Shown piece by piece: positions 7,381-64,000 of a DNA stretch of 64,000 nt. The stretch comes from Octopus sinensis (lineage: Eukaryota). The notes under the pieces were generated by a model that was not told where the DNA came from, ran no database searches, and saw only the letters and a program-made list of their open reading frames with translations. The translations under genes were made by a program, and so were the position numbers. How positions within the stretch are numbered: position 1 is the first letter of the stretch; each line of letters opens with the position of its first letter. The stretch is from NCBI RefSeq assembly GCF_006345805.1, contig NC_043017.1, forward strand, positions 30,380,001 to 30,444,000, written 5' to 3'.

Positions 7381-8005
7381 AGGCGGCGAGCTGGCAGAAA
7401 CGTTAGCACACTGGGCGAAGTGCGTAGCCATATTTCGTCTGCCGTTACGTTCTGGGTTCAAATTCCGCCGTGGTCGACTCTGCCTTTCATCCTTTCGGGG
7501 TCGATAAATTAAGGGATCTTTTCGGTTTGAACGGCAGTTTTTAACATAAAAAATGTTAAACTTCGTGTACTGGTAGAATGTATTTATAAAACATCTTTTT
7601 CTCTTGGCTTTATTGAGAAAATTCTATAGTTTGTAAGACATTTGTTGTTTTTTTCCTTCAATTTCTGCAATTTCAACCAATGACGTCTATTGAGGTAAAA
7701 AAACATTCTGTGCCGTATGAATATGTCCCTCGTTTAAAAAAACAGATTGGGTTTATTTACATTTCTGAAGAAAATAAGATACCCTTCCCCCCACCCCTAA
7801 CCCTAACTAATCCTAACCCTGAAACAGATTGAAATGCAATAGATCGATACTAGGGTCATAATTGTGGGTGACAATTTCATATGACACAGCTAGAAAAAAC
7901 TGCCGTTGAAACCGAAAGGATCCAAATTAAGTACCAGTTACGCACTAGGCTCGATGTAATCGACTTAATCCGTGTGTCCCCTCTGTGTTTAGCTCCTTGT
8001 GGGTA
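7381..8005 (+). mobile_element. SINE family A interrupted by a MITE
   Basis: SINE sequence stops at ...gataaattaag (7513) and resumes as aaattaagtaccag (7924). Confidence 0.9.
7514..7923. mobile_element. GGATC-TIR MITE with perfect 8-bp TSD AAATTAAG
   Basis: TSD at 7506-7513 and 7924-7931, with terminal inverted repeats of ~28 bp. Confidence 0.95.
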
Positions 8006-10850: not shown

Positions 10851-11262
10851 GGATAAGGTTTGAACGGCAGCTTTTTCTAGCGGTGTCATATGAAATTATC
10901 ACCCATAATTATGACCCTATTATCGATCTGTTTTAGGGTTAGGGTTAGAGTTAGGGTTAGGTTTAAGGGTGGGGGGAAGGGTATCATTTTCATCAGAAAT
11001 GTAAATAAACCTAATCTGTGTCTTAAACGAGGGACATATTCATACGGCACAGAATGTTTTCACCTCAATAGACGTCATTGATTGGTTGAAATTGCAGAAA
11101 TTGAAGAAAAAAACAACAAATATCTTACAAACTATAGAATTTTCTCAATAAAGTCAAGAGAAAAAGATGTTTTATAAATACATTCAACCAGTATACGAAG
11201 TTTAAAATGTTTTAGTTACCTAGAAATTATGTTAAAAACTGCCGTTCAAACCTAAAAGATCC
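10851..11262. mobile_element. GGATC-TIR MITE (left TIR damaged)
   Basis: Family body with an intact right TIR (aaaactgccgttcaaacctaaaagatcc) and an expanded ttaggg-like tract. No TSD recovered. Confidence 0.9.
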
Positions 11263-24084: not shown

Positions 24085-26693
24085 ACGGGAAGCTTTATGA
24101 AAATAAACAAAAGACGAAGGCAGGTTGAAAACAAACGAACAATTGTATTAGTATGGCGCTCAGGAAATATAAATAAAACAAGTCTTTAACGTTTCGAGCC
24201 TACGCTCTTCAACAGAAAGATACACAGAGAGAGAAAAACACAGAAAGAAGGAGAGAAAAAAAAAATGCGTGCAGTAGCTAACGAATCAACAATTGGCGAT
24301 CTGATTTCGGCCAGAGGTCAAAGATCAAACATGAGACGCGAGAGCGAAATAAGGGGAGATAATAGGTTGATAATGGGTTGAGGGACCAGCTAAAAGTGCG
24401 TGGGAGGGGTCTGGATGTGTGTATGTTACGGTTGGTGTATGTATTAGTATGTATAAGGGTGTGTGTGTGTGTGTGTGTGTGTATGAGAGAGTATTAGTGC
24501 GTAAGATTGGTCTGGACGTGCGTATGTATGGGGTTGGTGTATGTATTAGTATGTATTAGTATGTATTAGTATGTATTAGTACGTATTGGTATGTATAGGT
24601 GTGTGTGTGTGTGTGAGAGAGTATAAGTGCGTATGCGGGGTCTGGACGTGTGTATGTATAGGGTTGGTGTAAGTATTAGTATGTACTAGTATGTATTAGT
24701 ACGTATTAGTATGTATTAGTTGGTGTGTCTATTAGTATGGCACATCATATGTGATGTGATGTGTAAAGTCATGTGGTGTGTGAGGAGAAGAGGGGGGGAG
24801 AAGAGGGGTGGGAGAAGGGAGAGGAAGAAGAGGGGGAGGAGAAGGGGGAAGAGGAGACGATGGGGGAGAAGGAAGGTGAGGAGGGGATGAAGGAGGAAAG
24901 AGGGAGGGGGAGAGAGAAGAAGGGGAGAGAGGGAGTGAGGGAGCAGAGGGAAGGGGAAGAGGGAGGGAGAAAGAGGGAAGAAGGGAAGGGGAGTAGGGGT
25001 GAAAGGATGAAGGACTGAAGAAGTAGGGGTCGGGGGGAGAAAGGATAGGTGAGGAGGGGGGAGAGGGGGGTTAGATGAGGAGGGGGGGGAGAGTTGAGAC
25101 CAAATGGCGTATAAGAGCGAAGAGAGAAGATTAATTCCTGTTCACGGCGCAAACGGGAATCCGGATGGCCTCTGTGTAAGGACAAACCGAACACAGATAG
25201 GTGATGCAAGGAGTGACCGGTGGAGCGGAAATGGGTGAGACCGGTGTGTCGTTCGCAAGGTGGATGTCACGAAGGTGTTCCGCGAACCGGTCAGCCAGCG
25301 GCGTCCCGTTTGTCCGATGTACAAGGAATTGCAGAGAGAGCAAGAGATGCAATAGATAATATTGCTGGAGGTGCAGGTGAAGGAGTGGATGATGGGATAG
25401 GGTCGATGGTGGGTGCTAGTGAGGCGGGTGGTGTTGGAGAGGTAAGGGCAAGTGCGGCAACGTGGCTGGGAGCAGGGGAACGAGCCGGGTTGGGAGGTAG
25501 GGTCAGGGAAGGAGCTATGGACCAAAAGGTCTCGAAGGTTGTGGGCTCGTTTGAAAGAGGGGAGGGGTCGGTTAGGGAAGAGGTGTGAAGTGGACGGGTC
25601 GGACTGGAGATGACGGAAAGCTCGAAGAATGGTGCGTTGGAGACGTAGGGTCGTGGGGTGTAAGTGAGGGGAAAAGGGAGGCGGGAGACTACAGGGCGGG
25701 TTCGGGAGAGAGAGCAGATACACGGTCCACGGACCGTGCTCTGGCAAGGGCGGTGTGGATAGTGGTGAGGGGGTATCCACGTAGGGTGAAGTGGTGAGCC
25801 ATACGTTGAGACTGAGTCTCAAAGTCATGGTCGTCACTACAGAGCCTACGTAGACGGAGGAATGGGAATAGGGGATGGAAAGCTTGGTGTGTTCTGGGTG
25901 GGAGGAAGAGAAGTTGAGGTATGAGTGTGAGTCTGTGTGTTTGTAGTGAATGGAGGTGGTAAGAGTGGAGTGAAGAATGCTAACCGAAATGTCGAGGAAG
26001 GAGACAGAGGTGTTGGAGATAGTGGAAGTGAAGTGGAGGGCTGGATGGAAAGATTGGACGAAAGAGAGGAAGGAATCTAGATGTTCGCGGAGAGGTGAGG
26101 TGGCACCGATAATGTCGTCAATATAACGACCATATAGTTCAGGAGTGGGACCAGTGAAATTAGAGAATATTTGGGCCTCAACATAGCCAACGAACATTTC
26201 GCATAGTTGGGGCCCATTCGCGTTCCCATGGCCACTCCCGAGACCTGATGGTAGAACTCGCCCGCGAACGAGAAGCAGTTCAGAGTAAGACAAGTTCGGC
26301 CAGACGAATGAGTGTGGAGGTTAGAGCGGAGGTCAAGAAAGTGTCGAAGGGCCTGCAGTCCTTCGTGGTGAGGGATAACAGTATAGAGGCTTTGGATGTC
26401 TCATAGTAAAAAGGATTTTGGAGGAGCCGGGAGGAAAGGAGAAAGAGTTGAAAGCCGGAGCATGGTTGGTATCGTGGATGTGGGAGGGAAGAGATGCCAC
26501 TAGGGGGGCAAGGACACGGTCGAGGTATTTAGAATGAGCTCCGTGGGGCAGTTACAGGCAGAGACGATGGGGCGGCCAGGGTTGTGGGTTTGTGGATTTG
26601 GGGAGGAAGTAAATGGTGGGGGTACGTGGGGTTCGCACAATTAGGTTGGATGCGGTGCGGGGGAGACGGGAGGACGAGATGAGGTCTTGGACA

Positions 26694-35815: not shown

Positions 35816-36007
35816 TCAATATAGTAACTAGAATGTTATATAGCAAATGACAGTAAAAAATTATTTATTCATAGAAAATTGGCCACATCTGAAGCACTAA
35901 GAATATAGGCTTGATTATAATGTTGATGATATTCATACGGAAAGCAATCTTTTAACATTCATTCTTGCGTCTTGTTTTGATGAATATATATATATATATA
36001 TATATAT

Positions 36008-36242
36008 ATCAGAAATATTAAATTTCTAAATATCTCATAGAGATATGTACGGTGGTGGAGCGATAGAGTGGTTGTATACTGTCAACTTAACGTGACAGTC
36101 CCGTAAGGGAATTACACCACCGCTATTTAGCCCTAGGAAGCATCGACATTTCCTATCGGCCTTGACACAGTTCCTGTGTCTTGCCCATCATCAGTCTAGA
36201 GTAGCACAGGCCTGCTAGCTGAAGATATGTGTCTAGACTTCG

Positions 36243-36276
<34 letters not shown>

Positions 36277-36301
36277 TTTATTTACTGATCACCAAAATCA
36301 G
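36008..36301 (-). mobile_element. Inverted, differently permuted copy of the 346-bp HHR unit with ~76 bp deleted
   Basis: Reverse complement matches 36299-36644 segment by segment. It starts and ends with atcag and lacks 36471-36546. Confidence 0.85.
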
Positions 36302-36659
36302 TATACAACCACTCTATCGCTCCACCACCGTACATATCTCCATGAGATATTTAGAAATTTAATATTTCTGATTTTGGTGATCAGTGAATAAACTTGCATG
36401 TATATTTACGAAGTCTAGACACATATCTTCAGCTAGCTGGCCTCTGCTACTCTAGGCTGATGATGGGCAATACCCAGAAACATGCATGTCTCGAGATGCA
36501 GGCCTAGCGGTTGGGGATGTTTGTCTCCCCTTCGTAAATATATAAGGACACAGGAAATGTGTCAAGGCCGCCAGGGAGCGTCGATGCTTCCTAGGGCTAA
36601 CCAGCGGTGTGTAATTCCCTTACAGGACTGTCACGTTAAGTTGACAGTATACAACCACT
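36299..36659 (+). mobile_element. Retrozyme-like non-coding element: one 346-bp unit plus a 15-bp terminal redundancy
   Basis: cagtatacaaccact occurs at 36299 and 36645. The unit contains an HHR, encodes no recognisable protein and is flanked by (TA)n. Confidence 0.75.
36451..36496 (+). ncRNA. Type I hammerhead ribozyme, predicted cleavage after C36490 (GUC)
   Basis: UCUAGG-CUGAUGA-UGGG-CAAUA-CCCA-GAAAC-AUGCAU-GUC-UCGAGA. Complete consensus core, 4-bp stem II, palindromic stem III ACAUGCAUGU, and stem I with one mismatch. Confidence 0.9.
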
Positions 36660-37064
36660 ATATATATATATATATATATATATTATTCAAAGGAATTCCA
36701 ACTCTGTTTTTTAAGTTTTATTTATGTTCTTTATAATATTAATATAGAATAAATATAGAATATATAGTATAAATAGTATATATAATGTAACATGAAACGA
36801 AGTATTGATTGTCTTATTGATAGATGGAATATTGAATATCAAATATTACGGGACTAGCATACTTTCTTGCATTAAAGCAGTCTTCAAGGTGCCTGGTTAT
36901 GACAGGAGTGTTTCAACTGTTTCAACTATATAAGTGTATATATATATTTATTTATATGTATGTATGTATGTATGTATGTATATATGTATATATATATATT
37001 TTTTTATGTGTATGTATGTATATATGTATATACATATATATATATATTTATTTATATGTATGTA

Positions 37065-50308: not shown

Positions 50309-50788
<480 letters not shown>

Positions 50789-50991
50789 TAATATGTTCAA
50801 TAAGAAATAATTATTTTCGAAATTTTTTCTCTTATGAGGTTTTTACGCTATCTACCTGACAATTTCTTGTTAAGTTTTCCTTATTAAGTAGTTGTCCTTA
50901 TTGCTATATATATATATATGTATATGCACATATATATGCATACAGATATGCATACATACGTGAATACACGTTTGTATATATATATATATAT

Positions 50992-52654: not shown

Positions 52655-55600
52655 ATGTTTCTTTATTAGACACACAGGGCTGCACACAGATAGAACAAAT
52701 TACAAGGTAGAGCTTTTCTTTTGAAGGTATTAAAAAAAAAAAAAAAAAAAAAAAGGGAAGGGGGAGGTTCGATCAAAAGGGATCGGAAAAGGAGAGAAAG
52801 AGGACAAAAATAAGGGGGGTTAAAAAAAAAAAAAAAAAAAAGGGGGGGGGGAGGGAAAAAAATGATCAATAGGGATCGTTATCACAGAAATGTCAATATG
52901 AAGTGTAAAGTGGAGGACAGGTGAGGTTTACCCGTGGAAAGAAAAGCCTGCGGAAAAGACCACGGTAACCTCGGTCAATGAAGTCACATTTTATATTTCT
53001 TTTTTTTTTTTTTTTTTTTTGCAAATAAGCAACTCTCTGTTTTCGATTTCTGGGTTCATAGGACTATGCTCAAGGTGGCTTCGTCATTCATACGTGCCAT
53101 TCTTGCTACATTCACCCATCTTTTTTTAAAACATTCGCTAGACAAAACTTGCCTCTCTACTCTCACTTTCCTTTTCAAGTGGTACTTGAAGAAGTTGATG
53201 AGAGATTGACCAGAGAGGAAGTGTTTGTCTCCAATCCTTTCAGACGCGTCCACCAGATACATTCTTTCGCCATAGCCACAAGGATGATGAAAATAGCTCT
53301 TCCTTCCCGTTTGAAGGAAGGAGGCGTGACAATATTGACGATAGACTCAGCTGATAAACCGACTCGTCCCACACGTGACAGCAGTTGTTCGACATAAGCC
53401 CACAGGTCGGAAATTGTTGGACACTGAACGAGTGCGTGCAGAACGGTTTCGTCGCTCTGACCGCATCTCGGGCAGGTCGGCCCCGTGTTTCTCGAGCCGT
53501 GTCTGTAGAGCTTATCCGAACGGGTAGCGCTTCTCGGTAGCACTGCCAGGCCAGGGATCTCTGGAAGTTGTCCATGGGCCCTGGCCCGAAAGTCGTCCCG
53601 AACAGGCGGGTCAGGTACTCCTCGTCGACGTCCAGGTTCGCCCCGAGCTCGTCGTCGTACCTCCCCTCCACTAAACCCCTATAGAATGCTTTGGTTGTGT
53701 TGAAGTCACTTAAGGTCGACCCAGGACGGCAGAGTTGCTTGAGAGCAACGCGACACTCGCGGTGCCATTTGCCCTTCCTCGGCCTCTTTTTGATCCACGA
53801 CTGCAGTTCGGTCATGGAGACGAGCTGCGGGAAAGCGTGCCTCACAAACGGCGACCACACCTGTTCACCGTCGTCTACATAGAGCCAGAGATGTCGCAGT
53901 CTCAGCGCGTGTCTGCGCATCATCAACCACAGCATGCCCAGCCCTCCTTTTAACGGGTGTTGACAGCAAATGGATCGCCTGACCATCGGGACGCATCCTT
54001 TCCACAAGAAGCGAAAGAGGATGCGTTGTAGTTTGGTGATGGTAGAGTCGGGACAAGGTACGACGGTCAGGCGGTAGTAGATGACGGACGCGATGTACGT
54101 GTTCGCCACCTCCGCTCGACCTTTTAGGGACAGTTTCCTCTCGGCCCATTGCCGGGCGAGAGTGACCACCCTACTCGTTATCTCGTTCCAGTTCTTCTCC
54201 ACTTGGAGGTCCGGACCAAACCAGACCCCGAGCAACTCAACCGGGCCGTCGGTCCAGCGTCCCACGACGGAGGCGCTGGTGGACGGCATGGGCTTGCTTC
54301 TCCAGGTGCCTAGTCGCAAGCCCACTGACTTTTCCCGGTTGATTTTCGCTCCTGTCACCGCTTCGTAGTTTTTCAGTGTCTCGCCGACCAGCTCGATGTG
54401 CTCGTGGCTAGACACTATGACGGTGACGTCGTCCGCGTATGCAGACACGCTCGTCCCGCATCCCAATTCTCGCGGGATGCCCCTTAGAGTCGCCAGCTTC
54501 CGCAGTAGTGGCTCAAGAGTCAATACGTATAGAAGCGCCGAGAGGGGGCATCCCTGACGGACCGAACGTGCAATGTCGAAAGGTCTCGATAGATGTCCAT
54601 TTACGCGAATTACCGAACGGATGCCTCTGTACAAGGCAGCTATCCAGCCGCGGAAGACGGGACCGAAACCAGCCGCTCTCAGGACTGCCTCCAAGTATCG
54701 ATGGTCTACCCTATCAAAGGCTTTTGATTGATCCAAGTTGATCAGGGCCCCACCCATGCCAGGTTCGTTAACTACGCTGTCTATGATGTAGCGCATCAGA
54801 TGGAGGTTGTCATGGATGGTCCGGCCTGGCACGGCGCACGTTTGCGCCTTGTCGACCAGTTTCTCGATGACAAGCGCCAACCTCTTGGCTAGCACCTTGG
54901 CCAAAATTTTCAAGTCTGCATTAAGCAGAGTGATGGGCCTAAAGTTATCTATTACATTTCCCTTGTTTAGATCTTTCTTCAGCAGTGTTACGGCTCCTCG
55001 GCTCACAAAACCAGGAATGCTCCCGTTTTGCTGCCAGTTGCAGTACACTGCCGCCAAGAGATCTCCAAACAAGTCTGGCATACAATTGTAAAGCTCGTAG
55101 GGTAGACCATCCAAACCCGGTGATTTGTCCCTCGAGCATTCTGCCATCGCTTCCCGCACTTCCGCCGCCGTGATGGCACCTTCGCAGCACCCTGCCTTTC
55201 TTGTCGAGAGTCGTGGTAGGCTATGTAGGTAGGCACTGAAGTCCACCCTACGTTCTTGCCCTCCACTCGTTCCGAACAGTCGGGCAAAATGCTGCTGAAA
55301 GGCCTCACACATTTTACTTGGCTCGAGCAATTCGCGCCCCTGTTCATCTACCAGTGACCGAATGGTGGCTTTGTTGCCCTGTTGCGCCTCTGCCACCCGG
55401 GCCTCTCTCGCGGCTCCAACACCTTCGTTCCTTAGAGCACGCATCCTAGCTCTGACAGCACATCCTTCGTGTTTGGCGTTGAAGTGTTGGTCGAGGGCCA
55501 ACCTCGCCGCCAAAACGTCGGATGCGATGCCGCTTCTAATTGCCTCTTCTAGCTTCTTAACTAGCTCACCCTCTACTCTATTTCTATCTATGGCTAGTGC

Positions 55601-56103
55601 TTTGCTGTACCTAATCGCTTCTGCTTTTACTGCTCTCTTGAGGGCAAACCACCATTTGTTGTTGATGATGGCTCCCGTCAAAGCCCTCTTTACTAGTGTG
55701 CTAATCCGGTCTCTGAAAACTTGTCTCGATGGGAAAGACGCGTTTAGTTTCCAGTATCCGGGACCCTGCCTAAGTGTCTTACCTAAGTCTAGCGTACATG
55801 TCACAAGTTTGTGGTCCGTGTAGCTGACTATGTGGAATTGTGGACATCCTATGCTATCTCTATCTACTGTCCTACACAGCATCCTATCTAGATACGATCT
55901 CGACGACCCGATGCGGTTGCTCCATGTCCACGTTGGCGCATTCGGGTGGTCTAGTCGAAACCTGTCAGACAGTTGAAAGCGTCTGAGCAGGTCTCTGAGG
56001 CATTTGCATCCCCGTCTATTCCTATCTCTACCCACGTAGTCTACATGCGTGTCCAAGGTAGCATTCCAATCCCCCACTAAGAGTAAAGGACGAGACGTTC
56101 CCA
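52655..56103 (-). mobile_element. Tx1-clade (L1-like) LINE copy 1, 5'-truncated within the endonuclease domain
   Basis: Long open ORF2 (~56100-53240, frameshift near the C-terminus): LLLVGDWNA, WTWSN...YLDR, DHK, KSPGLDG, FRPITLLNADLKI, DQSKAFDRV, VRQGCPLS, AYADD, CPRC...ET..H..C. aataaa lies 7 nt before (ATCT)n. Confidence 0.95.
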
Positions 56104-56105
56104 AA

Positions 56106-56166
<61 letters not shown>

Positions 56167-56195
56167 AAGATAGATAGATAAATAGATAGATAGAT
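56104..56195. repeat. (AGAT)n tract between Tx1 copies 1 and 2
   Basis: Directly visible. Confidence 0.97.

Positions 56196-64000
<7,805 letters not shown>

What the first reader, a model, noticed from the sequence alone, without database searches (positions are those of the whole stretch)
36299..36659. Retrozyme-like 346-nt unit with an intact type I hammerhead ribozyme
Seen in the sequence: a non-coding unit bounded by a 15-bp direct repeat (cagtatacaaccact at 36299 and 36645, period 346). It carries a full HHR core (CUGAUGA, UGGG/CCCA stem II, GAAAC, palindromic stem III, GUC site at 36490). Stem I can extend with bulges (ggcct-c-tgc/gcaggcc, gcta/tagc). A perfect 13-bp stem (36401-36413 with 36530-36542) encloses the ribozyme domain, and further hairpins are present (gggga/tcccc, gacaca/tgtgtc, actgtca/tgacagt). 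Established: animal non-LTR retrozymes are short non-coding repeats of roughly 170-400 nt with type I HHRs that yield circular RNAs, and palindromic stem III allows dimeric cleavage. Inference: this is a cephalopod retrozyme family copied from a circular or multimeric RNA. I do not recall one being described for this group but cannot check.
Basis: partly seen in the sequence, partly recalled or inferred. Interest (0 to 1): 0.92.

Follow-up and report, generated by a model that had tools for sequence, protein, structure and literature searches.

The report
Solo hammerhead retrozyme insertion, inverted pair
A 346-base non-coding mobile element carrying a hammerhead self-cleaving RNA motif sits in a TA-repeat as two head-to-head, circularly permuted copies; it is a probable octopus-lineage member of the known animal 'retrozyme' class, not a new kind of element.

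Summary
The 15-bp repeat with period 346, the hammerhead (HHR) core, the GUC site at 36490 and the listed stems are all present. Rfam finds no hammerhead, even at E<=10. However, a covariance model I built only from four published retrozyme HHRs (coral, mussel, two axolotl) puts 36451-36496(+) first in the window (26.6 bits, E~1e-5; next hit 13.5 bits). A strict descriptor gave 0 hits in 3000 shuffles.

It runs unit 70->346->1->74, lacks 76 nt including the 3' half of its HHR, and is about 94% identical. The two copies meet 5'-to-5' with a 3-nt overlap, and both 3' ends abut (AT)n. They start and end at different unit positions, and together show every junction of the circle as contiguous sequence. 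That fits copying from a circular or multimeric RNA, with Penelope-like insertion architecture.

The unit has no ORF, 45% GC, and a strongly self-paired predicted circle (z=-6.4). This locus holds only one intact HHR, so it is a solo, dead-end copy. Copy number, tandem master arrays, cleavage and circRNA could not be tested. The class is already known in molluscs (mussel), so I rate it a new member of a known kind.

The parts
35984..36009 (.). (AT)n tract directly abutting the 3' end of the inverted copy; left half of the presumed (TA)n target microsatellite
   Evidence: (AT)>=6 tracts cover only 2.2% of the window, yet both outer ends of the composite touch one.
36008..36301 (-). Inverted, defective, circularly permuted copy. 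It runs unit 70-172, then a 76-nt deletion of unit 173-248 (3' half of the HHR and the 3' strand of helix I), then unit 249-346 continuing without a break into unit 1-74. About 94% identical to the + copy.
   Evidence: Alignment to a dimer of the unit; BLAST.
36246..36274 (.). (AT)n expansion inside the inverted copy, replacing GCATGTAT of the unit (unit ~97-104)
   Evidence: Unit coordinates are nearly continuous across it (96 -> ~104), so this is one copy with a microsatellite expansion rather than two separate inserts.
36181..36194 (-). Remnant 5' half of the HHR in the inverted copy (CUGAUGAUGGGCAA), cut off by the 76-nt deletion
   Evidence: model R1 scores it only 11 bits.
36299..36301 (.). 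Head-to-head junction: 3-nt overlap CAG/CTG shared by the 5' ends of the two copies (unit 1-3 of the + copy = reverse complement of unit 70-72 of the - copy)
36299..36659 (+). Full copy, 1.04 units (unit 1-346 plus 15 nt of the next round). The 15-bp terminal redundancy lies at 36299-36313 and 36645-36659.
   Evidence: The - copy reads straight through this junction, so the 15-mer is terminal redundancy of a circular or tandem template, not a target-site duplication.
36451..36496 (+). Type I hammerhead ribozyme: helix I 36451-36456/36491-36496; CUGAUGA 36457-36463; helix II 36464-36476; GAAAC 36477-36481; palindromic helix III 36480-36489; predicted cleavage after C36490
   Evidence: Model R1 built from published retrozyme HHRs: 26.6 bits, E~1.5e-5. 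Strict descriptor: 0 hits in 3000 shuffles. No Rfam hit.
36401..36542 (+). Extended helix I rod: 36401-36456 pairs with 36491-36542, including the perfect 13-bp stem. Helices II and III sit at its tip.
   Evidence: Circular minimum-free-energy fold: -119.8 kcal/mol, z=-6.4 against 200 dinucleotide shuffles, 70% of bases paired.
36659..36683 (.). (AT)n tract directly abutting the 3' end of the + copy; right half of the presumed (TA)n target

Best explanation
The locus is a fossil insertion of a 346-nt, non-coding, hammerhead-bearing retroelement of the animal non-LTR retrozyme type, which depends on another element for its mobility. The proposed life cycle has four steps. (1) Master copies elsewhere in the genome, probably tandem, are transcribed as multimers. 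(2) The type I HHR cuts after GUC (unit 192|193), alone or as a dimer through its 10-nt palindromic helix III. (3) The monomers are ligated into highly self-paired circles. (4) A reverse transcriptase from an autonomous element, most likely a Penelope-like element (PLE) with a GIY-YIG nuclease that targets (TA)n, copies the circular or multimeric RNA at a nicked (TA)n site. At this locus both nicked strands appear to have primed synthesis. That produced two cDNAs, each slightly longer than one unit. They begin at different points of the circle, have their 3' ends in the (AT)n, and are joined 5'-to-5' at a 3-nt microhomology. The left copy later lost, or was made without, 76 nt including half of its ribozyme, and gained an (AT)n expansion. 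With one intact HHR and 1.04 units, the locus itself is a dead-end 'solo' copy. Shown here: the anatomy, the HHR match, the permutation and the predicted fold. Inferred: transcription, cleavage, circularisation, the identity of the reverse transcriptase and the twin-priming event.
For: The HHR is recognised by a model trained only on published retrozyme HHRs, with 26.6 bits against a next-best 13.5. Loci that merely share the core pattern reach at most 21.4 bits. A strict descriptor gave 0 hits in 3000 shuffles. The coral retrozyme HHR, which cleaves efficiently in vitro, has the same helix III design (ACAGUACUGU against ACAUGCAUGU here), and axolotl Ax353 also has U at position 10.1. The copies are permuted: the + copy runs unit 1->346->15 and the - copy runs 70->346->1->74, so every junction of the circle is seen as contiguous sequence in one copy or the other. 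There is no ORF. GC is 44.8%, and the circular fold has z=-6.4 with 70% of bases paired. The palindrome self-duplex is -13.3 kcal/mol, and the dimer cofold is slightly favoured at -49.5 against 2 x -23.2. Both outer ends lie in (AT)n although such tracts cover only 2.2% of the window. An inverted 5'-truncated copy next to a direct copy, together with a (TA)n target bias, is the published PLE insertion pattern. A PLE-like ORF remnant lies in the same window. Size, GC, absence of LTR/PBS/PPT and the self-paired circle match published non-LTR retrozymes, including mussel units of 350-390 bp.
Against: No Rfam hammerhead model reports the site, even at E<=10 on 116 nt. The 10.1-11.1 pair is U-A rather than the conserved G-C. 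Helix I has an A.G mismatch. The catalytic fold of the isolated domain (-12.2 kcal/mol) is less stable than an alternative fold (-23.2). Only two copies are known, both at one locus and possibly from a single event. There is no tandem array and no second HHR. The unit shows no similarity to the only PLE remnant in the window, nor to the mussel or coral retrozymes outside the HHR. The 17 substitutions between the copies show no clear structure-preserving pattern: where the partner base is present, 2 keep the pair and 3 break it. No eukaryotic genome or transcriptome could be searched.
Confidence: 0.7

Rival explanations
1. The two copies are fragments of the pseudo-LTR of an autonomous Penelope-like element (5'-truncated PLE insertions), not a separate non-autonomous element. 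The HHR would then be the ordinary pLTR ribozyme.
For: PLE pLTRs carry type I HHRs, and PLE insertions typically show an inverted truncated copy plus a (TA)n target. A PLE-like ORF remnant is in the window. Retrozymes and pLTRs are phylogenetically intermixed in Xenopus. A second HHR-like head-to-head pair at 50397-50794 looks like fixed-end 5'-truncated copies.
Against: The repeat period is 346 nt with no ORF. The - copy reads 249->346->1->74 and the + copy reads 1->346->15, so the template repeated every 346 nt and not every ~3 kb. The HHR has the 'canonical' retrozyme design (4-bp helix II, 6-bp helix I, helix III with a loop) rather than the minimal PLE design. It shows no similarity to the window's PLE remnant.
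Confidence: 0.13
2. The locus is the decayed, rearranged remnant of a local tandem (satellite-like) array of the 346-nt unit, broken by an inversion and deletions, rather than a fresh twin-primed insertion from RNA.
For: Animal HHR repeats are classically satellite-like tandem arrays. Permuted ends also arise from any cut through an array. The arms differ by about 6% and by a 76-nt deletion.
Against: Each arm is just over one unit long. Both outer ends fall exactly at (AT)n tracts. The inner ends meet at a 3-nt microhomology, with no leftover array sequence and no further unit fragments nearby.
Confidence: 0.1
3. The hammerhead-like motif is not a working ribozyme: it is either a decayed or chance motif inside an unrelated short interspersed or foldback repeat.
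For: There is no Rfam hit. The 10.1-11.1 pair is U-A and helix I has a mismatch. A loose descriptor hits 13% of shuffled windows. The composite forms a long hairpin that draws spurious miRNA-model hits.
Against: A strict descriptor gave 0 hits in 3000 shuffles. The independent model gave E~1e-5. The same U-A core recurs with a palindromic helix III and a valid cleavage triplet in 8 of 21 metagenome hits, where about 1 in 64 is expected by chance, and these too are missed by Rfam. The termini are asymmetric by 59 nt, which does not fit a transposon with terminal inverted repeats.
Confidence: 0.07

Closest known systems
Mytilus galloprovincialis non-LTR retrozyme (Mg353; Cervera & de la Pena 2020, PMC7229834)
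   Same: Both are from molluscs. The unit is 350-390 bp against 346 bp here. Both are non-coding and AT-rich, with a type I HHR whose helix III is short and palindromic (ACGCGCGU against ACAUGCAUGU). Both have a predicted self-paired circle and coexist with PLEs.
   Different: There is no sequence similarity outside the HHR core. The mussel element is found as tandem repeats with about 5000 HHRs and has proven circRNA; here there is one solo copy plus one defective inverted copy, and no expression data. The mussel HHR has G10.1-C11.1; this one has U-A.
Acropora millepora retrozyme Amil224
   Same: Same HHR architecture: 6-bp helix I, 4-bp helix II with a 5-nt loop, and a 10-nt palindromic helix III followed by GUC. 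The coral HHR cleaves efficiently as a monomer.
   Different: The coral unit is 220-240 bp, in arrays of up to 62 units, and its sequence is unrelated.
Axolotl retrozymes Ax353/Ax330 and newt satellite-2 HHRs
   Same: Type I HHRs with an unstable palindromic helix III that need dimers for good cleavage. Ax353 also has U at position 10.1.
   Different: They are vertebrate elements with up to 120,000 copies in tandem, and their sequences are unrelated.
Minimal HHRs in pseudo-LTRs of Penelope-like elements (Cervera & de la Pena 2014, PMC4209133; Craig et al. 2021, PMC8557442)
   Same: Type I HHR with a palindromic helix III. The insertion architecture is the same: an inverted truncated copy next to a direct copy, with a (TA)n target bias. 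'Dual motifs on opposite strands 100-700 bp apart' are reported.
   Different: PLE units carry an RT/GIY-YIG ORF and repeat every ~3 kb. Their minimal HHRs have a larger helix II, a shorter helix I and usually no helix III loop. Here the period is 346 nt and there is no ORF.

Membership tests
Hammerhead ribozyme, type I | Catalytic core CUGANGA / GAAAY / RUH in the right order | tested here: met
   CUGAUGA at 36457, GAAAC at 36477, GUC at 36488-36490. The core definition is taken from the PMC7229834 supplement.
Hammerhead ribozyme, type I | Three helices around the core, with helices II and III closed by loops and helix I open | tested here: met
   Helix II has 4 Watson-Crick pairs and a 5-nt loop. 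Helix III is ACA/UGCA/UGU. Helix I pairs at 5 of 6 positions and extends to about 55 bp.
Hammerhead ribozyme, type I | Match to the curated Rfam hammerhead covariance models | tested here: not met
   No hammerhead hit at gathering score, nor at E<=10 on 801 nt or 116 nt. Eight HHR-like motifs in other contigs with the same core are also missed.
Hammerhead ribozyme, type I | Match to a covariance model of experimentally used retrozyme HHRs | tested here: met
   Model R1, built from coral, mussel and two axolotl HHRs only: 26.6 bits, E~1.5e-5, full length, top hit in 128 kb searched.
Hammerhead ribozyme, type I | Conserved G10.1-C11.1 pair | tested here: not met
   The pair is U10.1-A11.1 in both copies. 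The published axolotl Ax353 has U at 10.1 as well.
Hammerhead ribozyme, type I | Site-specific self-cleavage | not testable with these tools
   Needs in vitro transcription of monomer and dimer constructs.
Metazoan non-LTR retrozyme | Non-coding unit of about 150-450 bp with a type I HHR, GC below 50%, and no LTR/PBS/PPT | tested here: met
   346 nt, GC 44.8%, longest stop-free stretch 75 aa. Definition taken.
Metazoan non-LTR retrozyme | Tandem arrangement with at least two consecutive units, each with a complete HHR (criterion for an 'active' retrozyme) | tested here: not met
   The + copy is 1.04 units with one HHR, and the - copy's HHR is truncated. By Li et al. 2026 this is a 'monomer'. 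Arrays elsewhere in the genome could not be searched.
Metazoan non-LTR retrozyme | Stable, highly self-paired predicted circular RNA | tested here: met
   -119.8 kcal/mol, z=-6.4, 70% of bases paired.
Metazoan non-LTR retrozyme | Multi-copy family with copies that start at variable points of the unit | tested here: inconclusive
   Two copies with different start and end points, but both at one locus. There are no others in the window. A peptide-based search for other copies found nothing.
Metazoan non-LTR retrozyme | Expression as linear and circular RNA of unit length | not testable with these tools
   No transcriptome access.
Metazoan non-LTR retrozyme | Coexistence with autonomous PLEs in the genome | tested here: met
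   ORF remnant at 25142-26293(-). Its homologues carry precomputed RVT_1 and PF26215 domains and, in a few cases, GIY-YIG (PF01541), with E values down to 5e-108. The ORF itself has no Pfam hit at E<=0.01.
Autonomous Penelope-like element (pLTR fragment) | The repeats flank an RT + GIY-YIG ORF, so the unit is several kb | tested here: not met
   The period is 346 nt, read through in both copies, with no ORF.
Autonomous Penelope-like element (pLTR fragment) | Sequence identity of the unit to the terminus of a coding PLE | tested here: inconclusive
   No similarity to the one PLE remnant in the window. No repeat library or genome was available.

The most novel reading that the evidence does not exclude
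This may be the first recorded cephalopod retrozyme family. The locus may also preserve a single twin-primed reverse-transcription event on a circular retrozyme RNA at a (TA)n site cut by a Penelope-type nuclease. If so, it would be direct genomic evidence, at junction resolution, for the proposed but unproven route of circRNA template plus PLE machinery in animal retrozyme mobility.
Probability: 0.4. Interest if true: 0.5.

Novelty: new member of a known kind. Interest (0 to 1): 0.35.

Why it matters
Animal retrozymes are a recently defined class. How they move is still hypothetical: the proposal is reverse transcription of a circular RNA by PLE enzymes. This locus adds an apparently undescribed host lineage; no paper in the searched library links hammerheads or retrozymes to cephalopods beyond a passing mention of PLEs. 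More usefully, it shows junctions that can be read directly. Two copies, each just over unit length and permuted relative to each other, have their 3' ends in (TA)n and their 5' ends joined by microhomology. If many such loci exist in the genome, the distribution of their end points would test the circle-template, twin-priming model without any bench work. The result also shows a practical gap: Rfam hammerhead models miss this HHR and similar ones, whereas a small model built from published retrozyme HHRs finds it.

Tried and rejected
1. Rfam 15 at gathering score on the whole window, and at E<=10 on 801 nt and 116 nt, gave no hammerhead. The only hits were spurious miRNA and snoRNA matches to the long hairpin made by the head-to-head junction.

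2. I searched for other copies in four ways. BLAST of the unit against the window found only this locus. A 22-mer of the unit in viral contigs found nothing. The HHR core pattern in viral contigs gave one coding coincidence. The same pattern in metagenome contigs gave 21 hits; none is a copy of the unit, but 8 are minimal HHR-like motifs with the same core.

3. I used the unit's longest stop-free translation as a protein query, hoping to catch ORFs called on other copies. It found nothing.

4. An exact look-up of the LINE ORF to name the source assembly found no record. The closest unnamed relative lies in assembly GCA_024449705.1, which I could not name.

5. I tested the 15-bp repeat as a target-site duplication and rejected it, because the inverted copy reads straight through that junction.

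6. I rejected a transposon with terminal inverted repeats or a foldback element, because the termini are offset by 59 nt.

7. I rejected two independent inserts separated by the internal (AT)n, because unit coordinates are nearly continuous across it (96 -> ~104).

8. I rejected a simple snap-back copy of the + cDNA. The - copy extends 59 nt further round the unit than the + copy does, and it differs by about 6%.

9. A covariation test between the two copies was uninformative, with only 17 substitutions.

10. A literature search for the Schistosoma HHR sequence string, to verify a remembered resemblance (a UAC bulge six pairs from the core and a CAAUA-like loop 2), found nothing. That resemblance remains an unverified lead from memory.

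Full report
**1. What is in the sequence**

The 15-mer cagtatacaaccact occurs at 36299-36313 and again at 36645-36659, a period of 346.
- CUGAUGA at 36457-36463.
- Helix II, UGGG/caaua/CCCA, at 36464-36476.
- GAAAC at 36477-36481.
- A 10-nt perfect palindrome, ACAUGCAUGU, at 36480-36489. As a monomer it can form a 3-bp helix III with a UGCA loop.
- C17 at 36490.
- A helix I 3' strand starting at 36491.

The 13-bp perfect stem (36401-36413 with 36530-36542) and the small hairpins are also present. The unit has no reading frame: the longest stop-free stretch, even in a trimer, is 75 codons.

**2. Is the hammerhead more than chance?**

Rfam 15 gives no hammerhead hit at gathering score on the window. 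It gives none at E<=10 on 801 nt or on 116 nt. A loose descriptor of my own is not convincing either, because 13% of shuffled windows contain a hit.

At the quality actually observed the picture changes. I required a 4-bp Watson-Crick helix II, GAAAC, a compact helix III of at least 3 bp, UH, and helix I pairing at 5 or more of 8 positions. The real window has exactly one hit, and 3000 shuffles have none.

For an independent test I took the four retrozyme constructs printed in the supplement of Cervera & de la Pena 2020: coral Amil224, mussel Mg353, and axolotl Ax353 and Ax330, each with its cleavage site marked. I aligned only their HHRs and built a covariance model, R1. With filters off, R1 puts 36451-36496(+) first in the window at 26.6 bits, E~1.5e-5, matching the full length of the model. 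The next hit scores 13.5 bits.

As a control I ran R1 over 174 kb of unrelated contigs that all contain the exact core pattern of this HHR. The best score there was 21.4 bits, and contigs where the pattern is a coding coincidence reached at most 17 bits. The Rfam negative is therefore a sensitivity gap, not evidence of absence.

The non-consensus U10.1-A11.1 pair remains a real caveat for activity. It is not unprecedented:
- Axolotl Ax353 has U at 10.1.
- In a metagenome scan for CTGATGATGGG-N3-8-CCCAGAAAC, 8 of 21 hits continue with a 6-nt helix III that is a perfect palindrome or nearly so (ACAUGU, ACGCGU, ACGUGU), a valid H17 and a short helix I. About 1 in 64 would be expected by chance.
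- None of those eight hits matches an Rfam hammerhead model either.

**3.

I aligned the minus strand of 36008-36301 to a dimer of the unit. It reads unit 70-96; then an (AT)n expansion; then unit 97-172; then a 76-nt deletion of unit 173-248, which removes the 3' half of the HHR and the 3' strand of helix I; then unit 249-346, running without a break into unit 1-74. Identity is about 94%, and it is uneven: 108 of 110 across the 346/1 junction but 54 of 62 in unit 249-310.

The + copy runs 1->346->15 and the - copy runs 70->346->1->74. Each is just over one unit long, they start and stop at different points, and every position of the circle is seen as contiguous sequence in one copy or the other. 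This includes the HHR cleavage site (in the + copy) and the 346/1 junction (in the - copy). The 15-mer is therefore terminal redundancy of a circular or concatemeric template, not a target-site duplication.

The two copies meet 5'-to-5' and share 3 nt (CAG/CTG at 36299-36301). Both 3' ends run directly into (AT)n tracts, at 35984-36009 and 36659-36683, although such tracts cover only 2.2% of the window. The junction creates a long hairpin, which explains the spurious miRNA-model hits.

**4. The RNA**

Folded as a circle, the 346-nt unit gives -119.8 kcal/mol, z=-6.4 against 200 dinucleotide shuffles, with 70% of bases paired and a GC content of 44.8%. Helix I continues for about 55 bp and includes the 13-bp stem. 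Helix II forms at the tip, and the rest is a set of short hairpins.

The isolated 72-nt domain prefers an alternative pairing of the core with the helix III segment (-23.2 kcal/mol) over the catalytic fold (-12.2). The palindrome self-duplex is -13.3 kcal/mol, and two domains cofold through it at -49.5 against 2 x -23.2. Dimeric cleavage is therefore plausible. Monomeric cleavage is not excluded, because the coral HHR with the same helix III design cleaves well as a monomer.

**5. Context and organism**

The window is eukaryotic and rich in repeats. A 991-aa ORF with apurinic-endonuclease and RT domains (53240-56215, minus strand) has as its best named relative a protein of Argonauta hians, an octopod, at 66% identity. 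A cephalopod origin is therefore plausible but not proven.

An ORF remnant at 25142-26293(-) has a GIY-YIG-like motif by eye. Its homologues carry precomputed RVT_1 and PF26215 domains and, in a few cases, GIY-YIG (PF01541), with E values down to 5e-108. It is thus a Penelope-like element, although the ORF itself has no Pfam hit. The 346-nt unit shares no sequence with this remnant.

**6. Mechanism**

The anatomy fits the published picture of animal non-LTR retrozymes. These are short, AT-rich, non-coding units with type I HHRs, transcribed as multimers, self-cleaved, ligated into self-paired circles, and copied by the reverse transcriptase of an autonomous element, with PLEs as the favoured candidate.

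The locus architecture is the insertion pattern described for PLEs: an inverted 5'-truncated copy next to a direct copy, in a (TA)n microsatellite. My reading is that both nicked strands of a (TA)n target primed cDNA synthesis on circular or multimeric retrozyme RNA, and that the two cDNAs were joined at a microhomology. Only the anatomy is shown here; transcription, cleavage, ligation and the enzyme are inferred.

A plain snap-back copy of the + cDNA does not fit. The - copy reaches 59 nt further round the unit and differs by about 6%. The locus has one intact HHR and 1.04 units, so by the criterion of Li et al. 2026 it is a 'monomer', not an active retrozyme.

**7. Rivals**

- A pLTR fragment of a coding PLE is disfavoured by the 346-nt period and by the 'canonical' rather than minimal HHR design. 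It cannot be excluded without the genome.
- A decayed, inverted tandem array is still a retrozyme. It is disfavoured by the exact (AT)n ends and the clean head-to-head junction.
- A non-functional or chance motif is disfavoured.
- The 17 substitutions between the copies are too few to test covariation.

**8. Comparison and novelty**

The nearest described relative in kind is the mussel retrozyme, with units of 350-390 bp. There is no sequence similarity to it, or to the coral element, outside the HHR. That agrees with the published statement that retrozyme sequences are species-specific.

In the searched library no paper describes a hammerhead or a retrozyme in cephalopods. Craig et al. 2021 mention only cephalopod PLEs of the Naiad clade, which lack canonical HHRs. 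I rate the finding a new member of a known kind. Its moderate extra value is that the junctions can be read directly and bear on the model of a circular template copied by PLE enzymes.

**9. Limits**

No eukaryotic genome, repeat library or transcriptome could be searched. Copy number, master arrays, end-point distribution, expression and catalysis are therefore all open.

Noticed in passing
window 50397-50794: A perfect palindrome: arms 50397-50595 and 50596-50794, 199 nt each, 99% complementary, with no spacer. Each arm begins 4 nt before a second, different hammerhead-like motif (GGCCUG CUGAUGA U-UAC-GUAA-GUA-U GAAAU CACUGUGAU A|CAGGUC). Model R1 scores each motif 13.5 bits, E~0.13. The left end abuts a long (TA)n (50312-50404) and the right end finishes in TATATA. 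The sequence is unrelated to the 346-nt unit. It looks like a second head-to-head pair of 5'-truncated HHR-bearing copies in a (TA)n site.
   Followed up: partly
window 24769-26293 (-): Decayed Penelope-like element ORF. It has a GIY-YIG-like motif by eye (IYCISCSLCNSLYIGQTGRR). Its homologues are RVT_1/PF26215(/GIY-YIG) proteins at 40-44% identity from sharks, gar, coral and unnamed assemblies. No HHR-like motif lies next to it.
   Followed up: partly
window 53240-56215 (-); also 56497-58922 (-) and 62764-63983 (-): One long LINE ORF (991 aa, with Exo_endo_phos and RVT_1 domains) and several fragmented copies of the same family. The closest named relative is from Argonauta hians at 66% identity. 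The N-terminus of the long ORF runs into a (TCTA/ATCT)-type microsatellite.
   Followed up: partly
window 7514-7913 and 10857-11262: Inverted repeats of about 400 bp (91-100% in blocks) flanking about 3 kb. Each arm contains a short run of telomere-like repeats (CCCTAA-like) just after a CTGA[A/T]GA heptamer. The element type was not determined.
   Followed up: no
L002, L003, L016, L018, L009, L010, L012, L021 (metagenome contigs): Low-GC contigs, probably eukaryotic host DNA, carry minimal type I HHR-like motifs with the same CUGAUGA-UGGG...CCCA-GAAAC core and a 6-nt palindromic helix III. Some contigs hold further copies on the opposite strand or have adjacent inverted repeats (L007, L021). 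None matches an Rfam hammerhead model.
   Followed up: partly
window 36262-36406: The head-to-head junction forms a long hairpin of about 120 nt that draws sub-threshold matches to plant miRNA precursor models (MIR2599, E=7e-4). These are artefacts of the inverted repeat, not miRNA genes.
   Followed up: yes
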